From assembly GCA_964270895.1 (NCBI GenBank), contig OZ185436.1: DNA of 64,000 bases. One strand, written 5' to 3'. Origin of the DNA: Podarcis filfolensis. Lineage: Eukaryota. The position numbers and the translations under genes were made by a program. The notes under the pieces were generated by a model. That model saw only the letters and a list, made by a program, of their open reading frames with translations, was not told where the DNA came from and did not search any database. This document shows, in pieces, positions 6,979 to 60,761 of the stretch; position 1 is the stretch's first letter; each line of letters opens with the position of its first letter.

Positions 6979-7971
6979 ATCTAGAAGCATCCACCCACCC
7001 ACCCACTCATTCATTCATACATACACACAAAATTGGCATTCTCTGAGGAAATATCTATGAGGCCAACAAACTTTTAGCTTCAAACATATTTAGCAAAAAA
7101 ATCATCCCAGTCCTTTGGGGATGGTAAGAAAGTGTCTTCCACTGGTACACATGAAGAAGATTACAAGCAAAAAAACCCCACATGTTTCCATCATAACAGT
7201 GAATATTTCAAAACCTTGTGTAGAACATTATACCAGGAATGGGGAAATAGATCTGATCTGTGGGCTGGACCCCTATCTCCCCAACATCCTCTGGGTCAAA
7301 GTTGACAAGTGGTAGAGCTGCCTACTTATCATCTGATGTCAGAATAATATCAGGTGACCCATGACATGGCACTTTAAAGTCTCCAATTGTTGAGTCTTCA
7401 AACCATTGTGCAGAGCTTCCTGCAAGTACAAATGATCAGTTGATTGTTAATGCTTACAGAGTGCCTGTACAACACTTTGAAGTCCTTAATATCAGATAAC
7501 AGTCAGGGCTGCAAAGTGCCATGCACAGCCCTCTGAAAGCACAGCCCATCAACAGTGATTGTGAAAAGAAAGGAAAAGCCATGCAGATCACTTATTGGCT
7601 CAGCCTTGACCTTACTGGACCTATTTCTGACATCATACATGACGTCAAGTTTACGGGAGGTGGGTATGGTTTCTCGTGGACAAAATGGAGAGGCCTGTCA
7701 GACCTAATTAGGCCCAACGGTCAAAGATTCCCCACCACTACTTCATACACTCCACTGATCCCGAAAGATAACTGGTGTCTTTGCAAAGTCTAAAGGAAAG
7801 ACGGTATCACAGGTAAATAATACGTAACAGCCAGCAACAGAAAAAGGATTCAGGCTGCATGATTAATTGGAAATATATAATATAAGATAATGTGTATCAC
7901 CTTCACAAGGCAAGGAGAGGGTTTTACCTAGCAGGCTTAAAACAGAAGACTTGTTACATAGGATCACTCAC

Positions 7972-8193
7972 CTTGATGTATACGTCAAGGGCTGTGTGGA
8001 CACGGTTCACTGCCAGATGGATGGACAGTGGAGTCGTGTAGGGAAAAGTTGCCATGACAACATGGCTAGGGGCTGGGAAGTTGATGATCTTGAAACCATA
8101 CTTCAGAAACATGCGCAGCACTTCCTCAGATGGCTTCTCTTCTCCTTCACTCAAGATGCTACCCACAAGATAGCGGCATTTCTCTGGATCCAC
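7972..8193 (-). CDS. TEX264: TEX264 second coding exon (74 codons, GyrI-like domain)
   Basis: VDPEKCRYLVGSILSEGEEKPSEEVLRMFLKYGFKIINFPAPSHVVMATFPYTTPLSIHLAVNRVHTALDVYIK continues the TEX264 sequence (..CRCAVGSILSEGEE...FGFKVFSFPAPSHVVTATFPYTT..). Acceptor TTTCTCTTTAAAG/GTG, donor AAG/GTGAGT, 222 nt, phase 0-0 and in frame with the previous exon. Confidence 0.97.
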
Positions 8194-8627
8194 CTTTAAA
8201 GAGAAATAAGGGCTGGCATTAGACAACAAAGGGCTTCAAAGGGCTCATGATACTGTGTTTAAAATAATGGAATAATACCAGTCTTATCATTCAGTGATCC
8301 TACCTATAGCTTAAGGCAGTGGTTCCCAAACAATGTTCTGGAGAGCCCTAGGGTTTCTCAGAAGCTTATTAGAAATGGCAAACATTTCCCAGCATGATAA
8401 CTTCCCTACCATTACTGACATTTATGTGCAGCCAAAGAAGAGCGCTGTACAAATTGACCCAGAGCCAAACAACACAGTTTTGAGAACCTTTAAGTCAAGA
8501 TGGGACTCTGGGTGGTTTATTAAATTGTGCATCCAATTGTCATATTTGCCTGAAAAGGGGGTTGTGGGGAAATTGCAGTCAAATATAAGTAGCAAGCTTA
8601 GGGCTAGTTAATACATGAAGGGGTTAA

Positions 8628-8981
8628 AGGTAAAGGTAAAGGGACCCCTGAACATTAGGTCCAGTCACGGATGACTCTGAGGTTGCGGCGCTCATCTCGC
8701 TTTATTGGCTGAGGGGGCCGGCGTACAGCTTCCAGGTCATGTGGCCAGCATGATTAAGCCGCTTCTGGCAAACCAGAGCAGCGCACGGAAATGCCGTTTA
8801 CCTTCCACCGGAGCGGTACTTATTTATCTACTTGCACTTTGATGTGCTTTCGAACTGCTAGGTTGGCAGGAGCAGGGACCGAGCAACGGGAGCTCACCCT
8901 GTCGCGGGAATTTAAACCACCGACCTTCTGATCGGAAAGTCCTAGGCTCTGTTGTTTAACCCACAGCGCCACCTGCATCCC
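8628..8981 (-). mobile_element. Full-length Sauria SINE
   Basis: tRNA-like head, recalled Sauria body, (ACCTTT)n tail; 15-bp TSD ACATGAAG(G/A)GGTTAA at 8613-8627 and 8982-8996. Confidence 0.92.
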
Positions 8982-9328
8982 ACATGAAGAGGTTAAGACC
9001 AGAGAATTATATTCCTAGACCCAGTTAGGTCATGGGCCCTTGTCTCCAGAGAAGTAAAGCTTCTTTGTTCATTTTCTTTCACTATGTGAGATAGGATGTG
9101 CCTGAGCTTACTCGCTACAAACTCAGATCATGTGCTTAGAGCTATTTCACTATATTTTGTATCCCACATTGCTGCTGCATAGAATAACTGTGCATAGAAT
9201 GACTCTGACGTTTGGAGTTTGTAAGTAAAGCATTTAAACTTACGAACAGTGTGGTCTGTTCACTGCAAGATGGGTAGAGAGGGGAAGCACTGTAAAAATT
9301 GTGAACCATCCAGAACAAATTTGGGGGG

Positions 9329-9462
9329 TTACAGATAGGTAGCCGTGTTGGTCTGCCATAGTCAAAACAAAAAAATTTTTTCCTTCCAGTAGCACCTTAA
9401 AGACCAACTAAGTTAGTTCTTGGTATGAGCTTTCGTGTGCATGCACACTTCTTCAGATACAC
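9329..9462 (-). mobile_element. Penelope-like element terminal (pLTR) fragment
   Basis: GTAGCCGTGTTGGTCTG...AGCACCTTAAAGACCAACTAAG...GAGCTTTCGTGTGCATGCACACTTCTTCAGATAC resembles the recalled reptile Penelope terminus and contains the hammerhead core. Confidence 0.7.
9423..9460 (-). ncRNA. Minimal type-I hammerhead ribozyme motif (Penelope-like element associated)
   Basis: Minus strand reads GUAU-CUGAAGA-A-GUGUGCAUGCACAC-GAAA-GC-UC-AUAC: stem I GUAU/AUAC, core CUGAnGA, self-complementary stem II, core GAAA, palindromic AGCU stem III, CUC cleavage triplet (cut between 9427 and 9426). Confidence 0.8.
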
Positions 9463-9557
9463 AGGGGGGGTGTATAGGGAGGTGTATAGGGAGGTGTATA
9501 GGGAGGTGTATAGGGAGATACACAGGGGGGGTGTATAGCGAGAGGAGAGGGAGGGGA
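9456..9557 (+). repeat. G-rich tandem repeat (12-bp unit GGAGGTGTATAG about x4, bracketed by a 22-bp direct repeat)
   Basis: GATACACAGGGGGGGTGTATAG at 9456-9477 and 9517-9538 with GGAGGTGTATAG units between; six or more G3+ runs. Confidence 0.9.
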
Positions 9558-9711
9558 AGTTCCACTGTGCAGTTGGAAGTCCTTGCTAAAATGGAACAAC
9601 TTTGTTGGATGCAACTCTATTCATTTAACATTGTGTGGTTTGGCCCTCAGTTTACGCAGGAATTTGGCAAAGGTTACCATAGTTGGTAACCTATGTGAAC
9701 TGAGATGGTGA

Positions 9712-9847
9712 CAAGGTTTCCCAAACTTGGGTCTTCAGCTGTTTTTGGACTATAACTCTCATCATCCCTAGCTAGCAGGACAAATGGTCGTGGATGATGG
9801 GAAATGTAGTCCAAAAACAGTTGGACACCCAAGTTTGGGAAACCCTG
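9712..9847. mobile_element. Palindromic hAT-like MITE
   Basis: TIRs CAAGGTTTCCCAAACTTGGG / CCCAAGTTTGGGAAACCCTG with the GACTATAACTCTCATCATCCC...GGGAAATGTAGTCC inner palindrome. Confidence 0.8.
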
Positions 9848-11646
9848 CCTTAGCAGATGCCAAGAGATTTATTGGCAAGACAAATCAATGTTAAAGGTCA
9901 CTCTGAAAGTTGGCATTTTGGAAACCACTGCTTTAAGAAAGCAAAAGTTATTCTTATTACATTTGTTCAATGCTTTTTACCATCAAAGCAACTTACAAAA
10001 GATCAAAATACAGAACTTCTGAAACATTTAAAAACCACAATGCAGAATAAAACATAATGATAAACACTTCAACAGAAATATCGAATTGAGTCTGAGGGAT
10101 GCTTCACATATTGCATTTTCACCATATACATGCTTCATGCTTGCTGTAAGTGAAAGGCAAGCAAAAGCAAATTAGTTGTTTTTACTGATGTTTGGTTCTT
10201 GAATACTGTCTAATATCCAATAAAAATTCAACCAGTAACTATATGACTAGTATTTATCACTATAGATTGGTTAATTGTGCCATATTACTGTTGCCCTCTG
10301 CTACACAAAAATAGCTTTTCACCAACATCATAGGAGGCACAGTCACACAGCTCACAGCCACTAAGTGGAAAAAGTAGGTCCAGCTCTCATTAGTACTGCA
10401 TTTAAAAAATGATTCTCAGAATAAAGATGGAAAGATCAACTTTAGGAATGTGGTAAAGATTACTCCAAACTTAATTTCAGCCTTGTATCTCCCTTGGAAC
10501 CCCAGAGCTGCAGTGAATAAGAAAACACATATAAGCATGTGCCGGGTGCCTTTCTTCAAATACTAATAATCACAACATAAGCAGCCAGGTACACCTGGGG
10601 TTAGGATTAGGAAAAAGGTTTCCAGCTTAGAAGGGATGTCAAAATAGGTTTGAGCGTTGTCACCACACATTTAGAGTATAGTCATGAAAATCATGTGTTT
10701 CCATGTTTCATTTGCTCATAGGTAATTTTACTGCAGAGTGGATGCTATTTGTCCCAGTTGTGGATTAGCAGATTCTCACAAGTAGCCACTGCATATGGAT
10801 TATATGTATTGAAAGGATTTCTGTGTAAACCTTATTTTTGGCGTAATGGAAGACAAAAGTCTATATAAGTTAAATGAATGTCTATGAATCCAAAAGGCTG
10901 GCAGTAGACTCTAGTCTGTCTTGACAAACAAACCAGACCAAACTTAAGGGTCAGATTATGAAATCTGAAAAATCTTTCTCATCTGAGCAACAGAGAGAAT
11001 AAGTGCCTCACAGCAACAACTATGCACAACATAGACATTATCTGGTGGAAGGCTTCATTGACTTCTGTAGTGGCTGATCTATTTGTTACTCAACAATGCC
11101 AATTGTAGGAAAGAGACCAATTAAAGCCAGTGCCAATTATCTGTCTATTATGAGTGAAGCAACAAGTGAGCAGCAGCAGCTGCTGCCACTGCCAATCCAA
11201 AGGTCTTACTGCTCTACCTGCTAGCCAAGGACCATGCTGTGACATTTTAAAAAAATATATGCAGACAGACTTTTAAGGAATCTGCCAGCTGAATATTAAA
11301 AACAAACCCCTGACATTCTCAGGGCCGTCATCCAGGCCAGCGCTGCCATTTCTGCTGCGTGCTGTGAATGAGTTTTCCTTTTCATTTTACTCATTCAATG
11401 ACAGGTATAGATCACCATGGTCTTGAAAGCATGTTTTAGATGTTTTTGATGCTTTCCTAAAGGCACTAAAGCCAAGCAAAAGGCCAGGCAGAGGAAGAAG
11501 ATGCTGTTTGCCAGAGACCAATTCTCCTTACTAAATATGGAAACGTGTGAGTCAAATCAGGTCCCCCTTTTCCCACATCAGTCATAAGTATGGAGTTAAA
11601 AAGACTGATAATGCAAAGGTACAGTTAAAATACGTGGGGAGGCTTT

Positions 11647-35384: not shown

Positions 35385-36068
35385 TTATTATTGAGGGGAA
35401 GTGCATGGAACAAGTCTTGGTGTTTCGATTTCTAGGAATGGAGTTGAGAGACGACCTAACCTGGGGAGAGAACAGCAAAGACCTGGTGAAGAGAGCACAG
35501 CAGAGGTTATATTTTCTGAGAATCCTCCGGAAAAACAATCTCTCAAAGGACCTGTTGATGGCATTTTACCATTGCACTGTGGAGAGCGTACTAACTTATG
35601 GTCTGTGTGTGTGGTTTGGGAGCTGCACGGCCAGGGAAAAAACAATGCTATCCAGGGTTGTAAAGACTGCAGAGAGAATTATTGGGTGCACTCTTCCCAC
35701 CTTAGATCAAATCTATGCTGCCAGGTGCCATAAGAAAGCGGTAGAGATAGCACATGATAGTACGCACCCCGGAAATCATTTCTTTCAGCTTCTGCCTTCT
35801 GGAAAAAGGTATAGGGTTATAAAGGCCAGGACTAACCGCCTGAGAAACACTTTCTACGCTAATGAAATTCTGGTTCTAAACGCAGCATAAGGGGTCTCTG
35901 TAGTATAGTGTATTTTAAAATGGGGTTTTAGAGTTTTTAGGCGTTTTTGAATGTGTTATGTAGTTTTGTAGTAGTTTTATGTAGTTTTGTGGTAGTTTTA
36001 TGTAGTTTTTCAATTTCATTGTTCCGCAAGGGACAATGACAATAAAGATATCGTAATCGTAATTGTAA
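35385..36068 (+). mobile_element. 5'-truncated Rex1/Babar-clade LINE (intact C-terminal ORF 35405-35890)
   Basis: FRFLGMELRDDLTW..KRAQQRLYFLRILRK..FYHCTVESVLTYGLCVWFGSCT..RVVKTAERIIG..HPGNHFFQLLPSGKRYR..RTNRLRNTFY matches recalled Rex1 ORF motifs; 3' stem-loop, AATAAA at 36041 and (TCGTAA)n tail. Confidence 0.88.
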
Positions 36069-47938: not shown

Positions 47939-47992
47939 TAATGATTGTGTTAACAGTGATGCAAACAAGAAGCAGCTCTCCCTGAGACTTAC

Positions 47993-48250
47993 CGTGTGAG
48001 GGCTGTCATAGTAGAGAGCAATGGAGCACAGCCTTGGAGAGATGCTGCAGCTCTCCGTAAACAGCCTTCCAGAGTCACCATAAGGCCCCACCTGGAATTT
48101 ATATGCCACAGTGATGCTGCCGAAGGGGGGCAAACCAGCACTCACAATCACTTCTGTGAAGAGCCCCGAATAAACAGCAAAGCCAAAGAGCGTCAACAGC
48201 AGAAGCGCAACCAGTGCAGCAAACAATCCAATGAGCAGCCAGTCTGCCAT
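47993..48250 (-). CDS. TEX264: TEX264 first coding exon (86 codons: N-terminal TM anchor plus start of GyrI-like domain)
   Basis: Translation MADWLLIGLFAALVALLLLTLFGFAVYSGLFTEVIVSAGLPPFGSITVAYKFQVGPYGDSGRLFTESCSISPRLCSIALYYDSPHT matches the recalled vertebrate TEX264 N-terminus (MSDLLLLGLIGG...TVAYKF..GLYGETGRLFTESCSISPKLRSIAVYYDNPH). ATG at 48250-48248; phase-0 donor ACG/GTAAGT at 47993/47992; 258 nt. An upstream polypyrimidine acceptor TTTTGTCCTCCTCTCTTGTCCTTAG puts the exon start at about 48281. Confidence 0.97.
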
Positions 48251-51700: not shown

Positions 51701-51909
51701 AAGCCGAGTTTCACGCCTGCAGCCAAGTGATAGACAAGGTTCCAGATCAAGCAAGTGATATGCACAGAAAAGACCATTTCCACGCACACACCTCCTCAGA
51801 TACAGCAGAGTAAGGAGCATGCAAAGAAAGAAATGGGAAAACAAGGGGAAATCTGCCCTGCCTCTCCTTCTTCCTCCCAAGCAAACAAACAAAAAACCCC
51901 ACATATGAG

Positions 51910-59364: not shown

Positions 59365-60761
59365 CTTCTTCTTTGGCGATCACTTGTAGCCGAGTAAGAT
59401 TGTCTTCAGTGAACACAGTCTTAACAGTGAGTCCGAAAGAGACTGTGGAGGACAATTCTGGATCCACACGTCCTTCCACAGTGGGGACATAGGTTTCCAT
59501 GCTTTCCTCTTAGCTTGTTTCTCCCTTGCGCCCTGAGTTTGAGTGTCTTCAAAGTCCACGATACCTTTGGTAAAGGCTGTTCTCCAATTGGAGTGCTCAC
59601 AGGCCAGTGTTTCCCAACTGTCAATGTTTATACTACTTTTTTTTAGATTTGCCTTGAGAGAGTCTTTAAACCTCTTTTGTTGACCACCAACATTACACTT
59701 TCCATTTTAAAGTTTGGAATAGAGTAGTTGCTTTGGAAGACGATAATCAGGCATCCGAACAACATGACCAGTCCAATGAAGTTGATGTTGAAGAATCGTT
59801 GCTTTGACACTGATCTTTGCTTCTTCCATTACACTGACATTAGTTCACTTGTCTTCCTAGGTGATATGTAAAAAATTTTGGAGACACTGTTGATGGAATC
59901 TTTTGAGGAGTTGGAGATGGTGTTTATAAGTGGTCCATGTTTCACAAGTATATAGTAAGTTTGGTAGTACAATATTTTTGTAAACAAGAATTTTGGTTTC
60001 CCTGTGAATGTCTCAGTCCTCAAACACTGTGCACTTCAATCGGGAGAAAGCTGCACTCAGAGCTCAGGCGATGCTGTATTTCAGTATCACTATTGGCTCT
60101 TGTGTAAAGCTAACTGCCCAGGTAGGAAAAATGATTGACATTTTCCAGTGCTGCACCATTAAGTTGGATCTGTGGCACTGCAGAGGGCTTGTTTTGTTCT
60201 TGTTGGTGCAGCACTTTGTTTTTTGGGATGTTGAGCAATTGGTCAAGCTTTTCATAAGCTGCAAAGCTTTTTAGGATGGTTTGGAGGTCACTGGACACAA
60301 CGTTGTCATCAGCATATTGAAGCTCTATGACGAAAGTTATGGTAACCTTACTCTTTGTTTTCAGCCTATTCAAGTTAAAGAGCTTGCCATCTGTTTGATA
60401 TATGATTTCTACCCCGGTGGGGAGTTTCCCTTCGGCAATGTGTATGATCATGTCAATGAAAATAATAAATAGAGTTGGGGCGATAGCACATCCTTGTTTG
60501 ACACCTGATCCCACTGTGAGCAGTTCGCTGTGAGAGCCATTGTTATCTGCGATTGTTGCTGTCATATTATCATGGAGGAGCCGAAGGAAGTTAATAAATT
60601 TATCTGGGCAGCCAACTTTCAGAAGGACAGTCCACAGGGCATTATGATTTACAGTGTCGAAGGCCTTAGTCAGGTCAATAAATGCCATATACAGGGATTG
60701 GTTTAGTTTTTTTCAGTAGATTTAGATAGCTAAAGCCCTATTCATCTTGAAAACCAACCCC
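59365..60761 (-). mobile_element. 5'-truncated RTE-clade LINE (non-BovB) with complex 5' junction
   Basis: AFIDLTKAFDTV..GVKQGC.IAPTLF..ELQYADD RT motifs (60110-60688), C-terminal CPHCGRTCGSRI.LHS..RTH zinc finger, (GAA)n tail, perfect 12-bp TSD TGCAAGATGAGT (59353-59364, 60762-60773). Confidence 0.92.

What the first reader, a model, noticed from the sequence alone, without database searches (positions are those of the whole stretch)
9423..9460. Intact minimal hammerhead ribozyme in sense orientation inside the TEX264 pre-mRNA
Seen: the minus strand, which is the TEX264 transcript strand, reads GUAU CUGAAGA A GUGUGCAUGCACAC GAA AGCU C/AUAC. All core nucleotides are present (CUGAnGA, GAAA, CUC triplet), with a 4-bp stem I, a fully self-complementary 14-nt stem II and a palindromic AGCU in place of stem III. 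Known: Penelope-like elements carry such minimal type-I hammerheads, which cleave as dimers through the palindromic stem III (Cervera and De la Pena 2014; Lunse et al. 2017). Inference: only one copy is visible here, so cleavage at 9427/9426, about 1.2 kb before the exon 8193 acceptor, would need a partner in trans (another nascent TEX264 RNA or any Penelope transcript). That would make it a possible TE-expression- or concentration-dependent cut site in a host intron. The ribozyme class is known; this host-gene context may not be described.
Basis: partly seen in the sequence, partly recalled or inferred. Interest (0 to 1): 0.72.

Follow-up and report, generated by a model that had tools for sequence, protein, structure and literature searches.

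The report
Transposon hammerhead motif in TEX264 intron
The self-cleaving-RNA (hammerhead) motif is really there on the TEX264 transcript strand, but it is one ordinary solo copy of a very abundant 135-base Penelope-type lizard retroelement, is predicted to be folded shut here, and shows no sign of cutting the host RNA.

Summary
The minus strand at 9460..9423 reads GUAU|CUGAAGA|A|GUGUG-CAUG-CACAC|GAA|A-GC-U|C^AUAC. It lies in sense orientation in the 39.8-kb first intron of TEX264, 1,233 nt upstream of the acceptor at 8194/8193.

It is not a chance motif. It heads a ~135-nt repeat unit (9463..9329) whose summed depth in three lacertid DNA data sets is about 5-6x10^4 times single-copy depth. 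It shows every published hallmark of Penelope-like-element minimal hammerheads and has the same layout as the Anolis Poseidon element.

The host-regulation idea is not supported:
- There is no second hammerhead core anywhere in the intron.
- In context, helix I forms with probability about 0.01, because five upstream AUACAC repeats capture its 5' strand.
- The active double-hammerhead dimer (-11.1 kcal/mol) is less stable than two monomers (-13.6) and far less stable than a helix-II duplex dimer (-30.6).
- A stranded RNA run shows family reads equally on both strands and no pile-up of ends. Coverage of this intron itself was near zero.
- Published work reports low in vitro activity, or activity that needs the element's protein.

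The scan has flagged the same kind of motif many times elsewhere in this genome (WDR20, EXT2 and PDE11A introns, among others). Verdict: an ordinary retroelement relic of low interest.

The parts
9423..9460 (-). Minimal type-I hammerhead motif. Helix I is GUAU/AUAC (4 bp). The core is CUGAAGA, followed by an unpaired A at 9449. Helix II is GUGUG/CACAC with a CAUG loop. Then come GAA, A15.1-G15.2-C16.2-U16.1 (palindromic AGCU) and C17. The predicted cut is between 9427 and 9426.
   Evidence: Read directly. It is the only hit of the descriptor in the window, with 0 hits in 300 shuffles. No Rfam hammerhead match.
9329..9463 (-). One unit of a very abundant short Penelope-type repeat, made of the hammerhead plus a ~95-nt tail. 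It is the only copy in the window.
   Evidence: Summed contig depth over 9363-9439 is 2.8M, 4.95M and 3.0M, against about 46, 100 and 51 in unique flanks. Depth drops to about 1e3 beyond 9517 and below 9285. Head-to-tail joints 9458/9464->9328 occur in other loci. No other copy in the window by blastn or nhmmer.
9329..9422 (-). Tail of the unit. It has an 8-bp stem, GUUGGUCU (9408-9401) with AGACCAAC (9354-9347), enclosing an A6/T7 run, and an AC-rich 3' end. The unit ends 113 nt after the AUG in loop II (9442-9440). This resembles the Anolis Poseidon layout, where reverse transcription starts 111-118 nt after the AUG inside the hammerhead.
   Evidence: Fold. Layout compared by eye. The length of the A/T run varies among family copies (table 4, place 9376). 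The AUG frame stops after 9 codons (read).
9465..9543 (-). Local 12-nt tandem array (CCCTATACACCT on the minus strand, about 4.4 copies), plus a 27-nt duplication (9455-9481 and 9516-9542) that re-copies the first 9 nt of the unit. Its AUACAC repeats pair with the GUGUAU of helix I.
   Evidence: Pairing probabilities. Low family depth there.
9464..9470 (-). C7 run directly upstream of the unit. Together with the C6 run at 9323-9328 it may be a target-site duplication (unproven).
   Evidence: Read. Tandem copies elsewhere carry only about 2 C at the junction (joints 9464->9328).
9323..9328 (-). C6 run directly downstream of the unit. It is the possible partner of the upstream C run.
7972..8193 (-). 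TEX264 coding exon 2 (residues 87-160), with the acceptor AG at 8195-8194.
   Evidence: RNA depth is about 9 in one direction only.
47993..48250 (-). TEX264 coding exon 1 (ATG at 48250, donor GT at 47992-47991). The intron that holds the motif spans 8194-47992 (39.8 kb).

Best explanation
The motif is the family-inherited minimal hammerhead at the 5' end of a solo ~135-nt copy of a very abundant, non-coding Penelope-like-element (PLE) derivative. The copy inserted in sense orientation into TEX264 intron 1 of a lacertid lizard.

In the parent elements, the hammerhead lies at the junction between the pseudo-LTR and the ORF. The following ~110 nt carry the site where the PLE reverse transcriptase starts. 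A unit of 'hammerhead plus tail' is therefore what a minimal or strongly 5'-truncated PLE template leaves behind (inferred by analogy with Anolis Poseidon).

At this locus the motif is most likely inert:
- it has no partner in cis;
- its 4-bp helix I is out-competed by upstream AUACAC repeats created by a later local duplication;
- the dimer that would build helix III is energetically unfavourable.

The intron is expected to be spliced out and degraded without measurable ribozyme cleavage. The motif is present because of transposition, not because the host uses it.
For: - All core and architectural features are read directly from the sequence. They match the published min-HHR hallmarks: an extra nucleotide between 9 and 10.1, G10.1-C11.1, palindromic 15.2-16.2 and a short helix I.
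- The layout matches the Anolis Poseidon hammerhead, CUGAGGA-U-[6 bp helix II]-GAAA-CG-UC.
- The unit is multi-copy. Summed depth is about 5-6x10^4 times unique depth in three DNA data sets of three related organisms, and tandem joints occur elsewhere.
- 82% of the laid RNA reads run on into unlike sequence, so they come from other loci.
- There is one copy in the window and no other hammerhead core on the transcript strand of the intron.
- Helix I probability is about 0.01 once 50 nt or more of flank is included. Its 5' strand pairs upstream with probability 0.77-0.99 per base (MFE).
- The double-hammerhead dimer scores -11.1 kcal/mol, against -13.6 for two monomers and -30.6 for the helix-II duplex dimer.
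- Table 6 lists no place where molecules begin or end, at a family RNA depth of about 800.
- Literature: low in vitro activity even as dimers; protein-assisted cleavage and no RNA-seq ends at the Anolis site.
Against: - No cleavage assay was possible.
- The RNA run had essentially no coverage of the unique intron, so locus-specific cleavage is untested. The run is also from a related organism, not the window's own.
- Ordinary RNA-seq would miss cleavage below about a fifth of molecules.
- Folding predictions ignore co-transcriptional kinetics, proteins and chaperones.
- The core is intact, and this copy appears to carry the family's majority letter at every position. No majority-variant row was listed for 9329-9463, but 245 rows were not shown.
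- No PLE ORF was linked to this unit here. The assignment to PLEs rests on motif architecture and layout, not on an alignment.
- Presence or absence at the orthologous site in relatives was not resolved.
Confidence: 0.87

Rival explanations
1. One reading: the solo hammerhead pairs through AGCU with a second nascent TEX264 RNA or with any Penelope transcript. It then cuts the pre-mRNA 1.2 kb upstream of the acceptor, so that TEX264 output depends on transposon expression or RNA concentration.
For: - The core is intact, AGCU is palindromic and the motif is on the sense strand.
- Family-derived RNA is far more abundant than TEX264 exon signal, at a depth of about 400 per strand against about 9, so potential partners exist.
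- The dimer mode of PLE hammerheads is published.
Against: - Helix I is masked in context, and the productive dimer is less stable than two monomers and 19.5 kcal/mol weaker than the non-productive helix-II duplex.
- Antisense family RNA is as abundant as sense RNA and would form duplexes with the motif.
- No ends pile up.
- Published activity is low or depends on the element's protein.
- Tens of thousands of equivalent copies exist, so this one has nothing special.
Confidence: 0.04
2. The copy is weakly competent. Where the PLE protein is expressed (for example in the germline), a small fraction of TEX264 pre-mRNAs is cut at 9427/9426 as a side effect, without any selected host function.
For: - The Anolis Poseidon hammerhead cleaves only when its protein is added.
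- The motif here is intact and appears close to the family majority sequence.
Against: - Helix I is sequestered by the upstream repeats.
- The tail's reading frame is closed after 9 codons.
- Whether the protein-binding region of Poseidon (the first 172 nt of its ORF) is functionally kept in this 113-nt tail is unknown.
- No ends are seen at family level.
Confidence: 0.08
3. A chance match to the hammerhead consensus in unique intron sequence.
For: The motif has few fixed letters. My rough estimate is a few chance descriptor hits per 1.4-Gb genome (an inference from the counts).
Against: - 0 hits in 300 shuffles of the window.
- The motif lies inside a unit with about 5x10^4-fold repeat depth, whose depth runs through the motif's 5' half.
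- Other-locus contigs carry the same core letters (table 5c).
Confidence: 0.01

Closest known systems
Minimal hammerheads of Penelope-like elements (Cervera and De la Pena 2014, PMC4209133; Lunse, Weinberg and Breaker 2017, cited through PMC6765202)
   Same: - The core boxes are the same, with an unpaired nucleotide between 9 and 10.1 and a G10.1-C11.1 pair.
- There is no real helix III; 15.2-16.2 is palindromic.
- Helix I is short at 4 bp, with no loop-loop contacts.
- It occurs mostly as dispersed single motifs in truncated elements, in families with very many copies.
   Different: Helix II is 5 bp with a 4-nt palindromic loop, so the whole 14 nt is self-complementary. The Schistosoma families described have 7-8 bp. 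This lacertid family is not named in the papers I could read, which mention turtles, snakes and Anolis.
Poseidon_Ac (PAc) of Anolis carolinensis and its hammerhead (PMC11167929)
   Same: - Same hammerhead architecture, with a 2-nt palindrome before UC.
- An AUG lies inside the helix II region.
- The unit ends about 113 nt after that AUG. In PAc, reverse transcription starts 111-118 nt into the ORF, in an AC-rich stem-loop.
- A few short strings in the tail are shared by eye (GCUnCUGGAA, AUGGC...AC-rich).
   Different: - There is no ORF here: the frame stops after 9 codons, and no RT or endonuclease gene is adjacent.
- In PAc the AUG is formed by A9, the bulge and G10.1. Here it lies in loop II.
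Non-LTR retrozymes (PMC7229834; bioRxiv 10.64898/2026.07.22.740005)
   Same: Both are short non-coding units with a type-I hammerhead and are derived from PLE pseudo-LTRs. They exist as monomers, dimers and multimers. Head-to-tail joints of this unit exist elsewhere in the genome.
   Different: This locus holds one unit only, so it fails the tandem criterion for an active retrozyme. Circular RNA was not tested.
[quoted passage not shown]
   Same: A hammerhead in sense orientation in an intron of a protein-coding gene, thought to descend from retroelement ribozymes.
   Different: Those are canonical type-I ribozymes with helix III and tertiary contacts. They are single-copy and conserved across classes of amniotes. 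This one is a minimal motif in a high-copy repeat, with no evidence of conservation.

Membership tests
PLE minimal hammerhead (min-HHR) | Catalytic boxes CUGANGA, GAAA and U-H at the cleavage site, in type-I order | tested here: met
   CUGAAGA at 9456-9450, GAAA at 9434-9431, U16.1 C17 at 9428-9427.
PLE minimal hammerhead (min-HHR) | [quoted passage not shown] | tested here: met
   A at 9449. The feature is listed in PMC4209133.
PLE minimal hammerhead (min-HHR) | A G10.1-C11.1 pair closing a longer than usual helix II | tested here: met
   G9448 pairs with C9435. Helix II is 5 bp plus a CAUG loop. This is longer than the canonical 4 bp but shorter than the 6-8 bp reported for fly and Schistosoma families.
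PLE minimal hammerhead (min-HHR) | No stable helix III; palindromic 15.2-16.2, so that helix III forms only between two copies | tested here: met
   A-GC-U at 9431-9428. The evaluated double-hammerhead structure is possible but weak, at -11.1 kcal/mol.
PLE minimal hammerhead (min-HHR) | A short helix I (4-5 bp) without loop 1 contacts | tested here: met
   GUAU/AUAC is 4 bp. In context its pairing probability is about 0.01.
PLE minimal hammerhead (min-HHR) | Belongs to a multi-copy family within one genome | tested here: met
   Depth is about 5-6x10^4 times unique depth in three DNA data sets, with tandem joints elsewhere.
PLE minimal hammerhead (min-HHR) | Physical link to a PLE (pseudo-LTR next to an RT/GIY-YIG ORF) for at least some family copies | not tested
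   There is no PLE ORF next to this copy. Only the layout analogy with Poseidon_Ac is available.
PLE minimal hammerhead (min-HHR) | Self-cleavage at the predicted site | not testable with these tools
   There is only indirect evidence: no read-end pile-up at family level.
Rfam hammerhead families (Hammerhead_1 and relatives) | A covariance-model match | tested here: not met
   No hammerhead hit at gathering score over the window or at E<=10 over 8000-11000.
Non-LTR retrozyme (active form) | At least two consecutive tandem units, each with a complete hammerhead | tested here: not met
   There is a single unit at this locus. The upstream array repeats only 9 nt of the unit.
Domesticated intronic hammerhead (RECK/CTCL/DTNB type) | A canonical helix III and helix I/II tertiary contacts | tested here: not met
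   no helix III hairpin and no loop 1.
Domesticated intronic hammerhead (RECK/CTCL/DTNB type) | Conserved at the orthologous intron position across species | tested here: inconclusive
   Contigs of two relatives about 1% diverged stop at 9542 and 9526, at the edge of the tandem array. Neither a filled nor an empty site was shown (table 8).

The most novel reading that the evidence does not exclude
Sense-oriented intronic copies of this lacertid PLE unit, including the one in TEX264, might become real cut sites when PLE protein and PLE RNA are abundant, for example in the germline. Bursts of transposon activity would then lower the output of many host genes at once. My evidence makes this unlikely for this masked copy but does not exclude it for the family.
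Probability: 0.03. Interest if true: 0.6.

Novelty: new member of a known kind. Interest (0 to 1): 0.12.

Why it matters
It matters little for TEX264. The result shows that an apparently perfect ribozyme in a host intron is what a genome holding tens of thousands of Penelope-type units is expected to contain.

The family may be useful as a minimal template for Penelope reverse transcription, since it is a 135-nt 'hammerhead plus start-site' unit at very high copy number. A genome-wide test of orientation and core integrity in introns could show whether these weak ribozymes ever act on host transcripts.

Tried and rejected
- Rfam search at gathering score and at E<=10 found no hammerhead family. 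This is uninformative for minimal motifs.
- A search for other copies in the window by pattern, descriptor, blastn and nhmmer found none. A weak 18-nt similarity at 51787-51804 has no GAAA box or stems.
- A metagenome scan with a degenerate 17-mer from the tail gave 58 loci, all chance matches. The best two are AT-rich unrelated contigs.
The orthologue comparison was therefore not done.
- The Lunse et al. 2017 paper is not held and is cited only through a review. The supplements of Cervera 2014 are not held.
- Pfam on the single exon gave no family. Gene identity rests on the named homologue.
- The isolated unit does not fold better than shuffles: z = 0.43, or -0.32 with the array. There is thus no thermodynamic evidence for a selected structure.
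The comparison is by eye.

Full report
**What is in the sequence.** On the minus strand, 9460..9423 reads GUAU CUGAAGA A GUGUGCAUGCACAC GAAA GCUC AUAC. In hammerhead numbering:
- C3-A9 is CUGAAGA (9456-9450).
- One unpaired A follows (9449).
- G10.1 (9448) pairs with C11.1 (9435), closing a 5-bp helix II with a CAUG loop.
- G12 A13 A14 A15.1 is GAAA (9434-9431).
- G15.2, C16.2, U16.1 and C17 occupy 9430-9427.
- Helix I is GUAU/AUAC (9460-9457 with 9426-9423).

The window has no N.

**Chance.** I wrote a descriptor with a helix I of at least 4 bp, CUGANGA, a 0-1 nt bulge, a G-C-closed helix II of at least 4 bp, GAAA, an optional palindromic insert, U-H, and the helix I partner strand. It finds this site alone in both strands of the window and nothing in 300 dinucleotide shuffles. 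The bare core boxes occur three times in the window. I estimate that requiring the stems leaves a few chance hits per 1.4-Gb genome; this is an inference. The motif alone would therefore not settle the matter across a whole-genome scan, but the context does.

**Rfam.** No family reached gathering score over the window, and no hammerhead appeared even at E<=10 over 8000-11000. Curated hammerhead models expect helix III and loop contacts, which this class lacks.

**Gene context.**
- Translation of 7972-8193(-) hits a 327-aa protein at 97% identity over residues 87-160. Its sources name it 'Testis expressed 264, ER-phagy receptor' of Podarcis lilfordi.
- tblastn places residues 1-86 at 47993-48250(-), with ATG at 48250 and a GTAAGT donor at 47992.
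- The motif therefore lies in a 39.8-kb first coding intron, 1,233 nt upstream of the acceptor AG at 8195-8194.
- A stranded RNA run covers the exon at depth about 9 with the first mate on the + strand only, which fits a minus-strand RNA.
- The host is a lacertid-type lizard.

**It is a repeat unit.** I laid the contigs of three DNA data sets and one raw RNA run on 7900-10200 at 80% likeness.
- Organism A matches the window's unique flanks without a single difference, so it is the same species. Organisms B and G differ by about 1%.
- Unique bins have summed word depths of about 46, 100 and 51. The bin 9363-9439 has 2.8, 4.95 and 3.0 million.
- The neighbouring bins, each only partly inside the unit, have 0.6-1.3 million. 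Depth falls to about 1e3 at 9517-9593 and to 5e2-3e3 at 9055-9285.
- The tool warns that summed depth is not a copy number. As an order of magnitude it indicates tens of thousands of copies at 80% likeness or better.
- Joints in other loci go from 9458/9464 back to 9328, which is a head-to-tail arrangement. The unit is therefore about 9463..9329 (135 nt), with the hammerhead at its 5' end.
- Contig letters at such joints repeat the same core and helix II letters (table 5c).
- No row with a majority 'other letter' was listed inside the unit, whereas such rows were listed for the neighbouring SINE-like and palindromic repeats. I infer, cautiously because 245 rows were not shown, that this copy carries the family's majority sequence and is probably young.
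- The window holds no second copy.

**Which kind of element.** Cervera and De la Pena (PMC4209133) describe the min-HHRs of Penelope-like elements:
- helix I of 4-5 bp;
- a long helix II;
- an unpaired nucleotide between 9 and 10.1;
- a conserved G10.1-C11.1 pair;
- palindromic 15.2-16.2 in place of helix III;
- thousands of copies per genome, mostly as single motifs in truncated elements, including in reptiles.

Every one of these sequence features is met here.

The Anolis Poseidon element, whose consensus is in the supplement of PMC11167929, reads CUGAGGA-U-[6-bp helix II]-GAAA-CG-UC at the junction between pseudo-LTR and ORF. That is the same architecture. There the ORF's AUG lies in the hammerhead, and reverse transcription starts 111-118 nt into the ORF in an AC-rich stem-loop, which defines the 3' end of genomic copies.

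Here an AUG lies in loop II (9442-9440) and the unit ends 113 nt later, after an 8-bp stem (9408-9401 with 9354-9347) and an AC-rich stretch. The frame closes after 9 codons, so the unit is non-coding. I read it as a minimal 'hammerhead plus reverse-transcription start' template, meaning a non-autonomous or extremely 5'-truncated PLE derivative. It is akin to the monomers of non-LTR retrozymes that a 2026 preprint derives from PLE pseudo-LTRs.

This step is inference. No PLE ORF was linked to the family here, and I compared the two sequences only by eye.

**Local history.** C7 and C6 runs flank the unit and could be a target-site duplication. Upstream lies a 12-nt array of about 4.4 copies and a 27-nt duplication with 61-nt spacing that re-copies the first 9 nt of the unit. 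The array therefore grew after the insertion.

**Would it work here?**
- The motif has no helix III of its own, and there is no other hammerhead core on the transcript strand of the whole intron.
- The 38-mer alone folds into helices I and II at -6.8 kcal/mol.
- The double-hammerhead dimer, in which helix III and both helices I form between two molecules, scores -11.1 kcal/mol. That is worse than two free monomers (-13.6), while the best homodimer (-30.6) is a 14-bp duplex of the helix II palindromes that leaves AGCU unpaired.
- With 20 nt of flank, the probability of helix I drops to 0.09. With 50-150 nt it is 0.01, because GUGUAU pairs with the upstream AUACAC repeats at probability 0.77-0.99 per base (MFE structures).
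- These are equilibrium predictions without proteins.

**RNA evidence.**
- The unique intron bins have depth 0 to 3, so cleavage of this particular pre-mRNA could not be tested.
- The unit itself has depth 413 and 404 on the two strands.
- 82% of the laid reads continue into unlike sequence, so these reads come from other loci in both orientations.
- The tool found no place where many molecules begin or end. Its threshold is a fifth of the local depth, so weak cleavage is not excluded.
- The run is from organism H, which shares the 8118 C variant with organism B. It is a relative, not the window's own species.

**Literature on activity.**
- A single Schistosoma min-HHR showed no cleavage. Dimeric and trimeric constructs showed low cleavage, mostly at non-physiological Mg2+.
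- The review PMC6765202 summarises the same and cites Lunse et al. for dimer cleavage.
- The Anolis Poseidon hammerhead cleaved only when the element's protein was added, and no public RNA-seq reads began or ended at its site.

**Host context.**
- Intronic hammerheads thought to be domesticated (RECK, CTCL, DTNB) are canonical, single-copy and conserved across amniotes (PMC6155905). This motif shares none of those properties.
- In Xenopus, 42-44% of retrozyme-family copies are intronic.
- With tens of thousands of units per genome, thousands of sense-strand intronic copies are expected (inference).
- The scan's own notes list the same kind of 38-letter motif in WDR20, EXT2, PDE11A and other introns of this genome. 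I treat those as leads. My depth, masking and dimer results at this locus agree with them.

**Not resolved.**
- Whether the orthologous site is filled in relatives is open. Their contigs stop at 9542 and 9526, at the edge of the array, and show neither a filled nor an empty site (table 8).
- A metagenome scan for the tail gave only chance hits.

**Verdict.** Origin from a Penelope-type element and the need for a partner are supported, but a regulatory cut site in TEX264 is not. This is an ordinary, probably young, solo copy of a known kind of retroelement ribozyme, and interest is low.

Noticed in passing
window 8627-8981 (minus strand): A SINE-like repeat about 355 nt long, with the highest depth in the stretch: up to 1.6e7 summed depth against 46 in unique sequence. 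It is also abundant in RNA on both strands. From memory it looks like the squamate Sauria SINE, but ARAGORN finds no tRNA in it. Tandem joints 8981->8627 occur in other loci.
   Followed up: partly
window 8981/9328 (joints seen in other loci): Several contigs in all three DNA data sets (5, 3 and 13) join the start of the SINE-like repeat (8981) directly to the 3' end of the Penelope-type unit (9328), in the same orientation. In this window the two are 346 nt apart. There may be a composite or preferentially adjacent arrangement elsewhere in the genome (table 5).
   Followed up: no
window 9712-9847: A 136-bp palindromic, MITE-like element with 56-nt arms (86% complementary, 24-nt spacer). It gives sub-threshold Rfam hits to the mir-609 and mir-5408 hairpin models, at 41 bits against gathering scores of 90-98. 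Its depth is about 1-2x10^4 times unique depth, and it is present in RNA on both strands.
   Followed up: partly
window 9092-9286: A low-copy repeat, with depth about 10-60 times unique depth and diverged contigs in all three DNA sets. One contig in each set skips 9089->9199, a 109-nt gap.
   Followed up: no
window 60110-60688 (minus strand): A 192-aa ORF with a reverse-transcriptase domain (Pfam RVT_1, E = 2.6e-13), about 12 kb upstream of the TEX264 start codon. The type of retroelement was not determined.
   Followed up: no
window 35405-35890 (plus strand): A 161-aa ORF inside the TEX264 intron that matches Pfam ALKBH8_N (PF09004, E = 4.9e-17). It is probably part of a retroelement ORF and not a host exon, but this was not checked.
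   Followed up: no
window 8118: An exon position where the window and organism A have G (+ strand), organism B and all 7 reads of the RNA run (organism H) have C, and organism G has A. This is a variable site in TEX264 exon 2 among close relatives (table 3).
   Followed up: no
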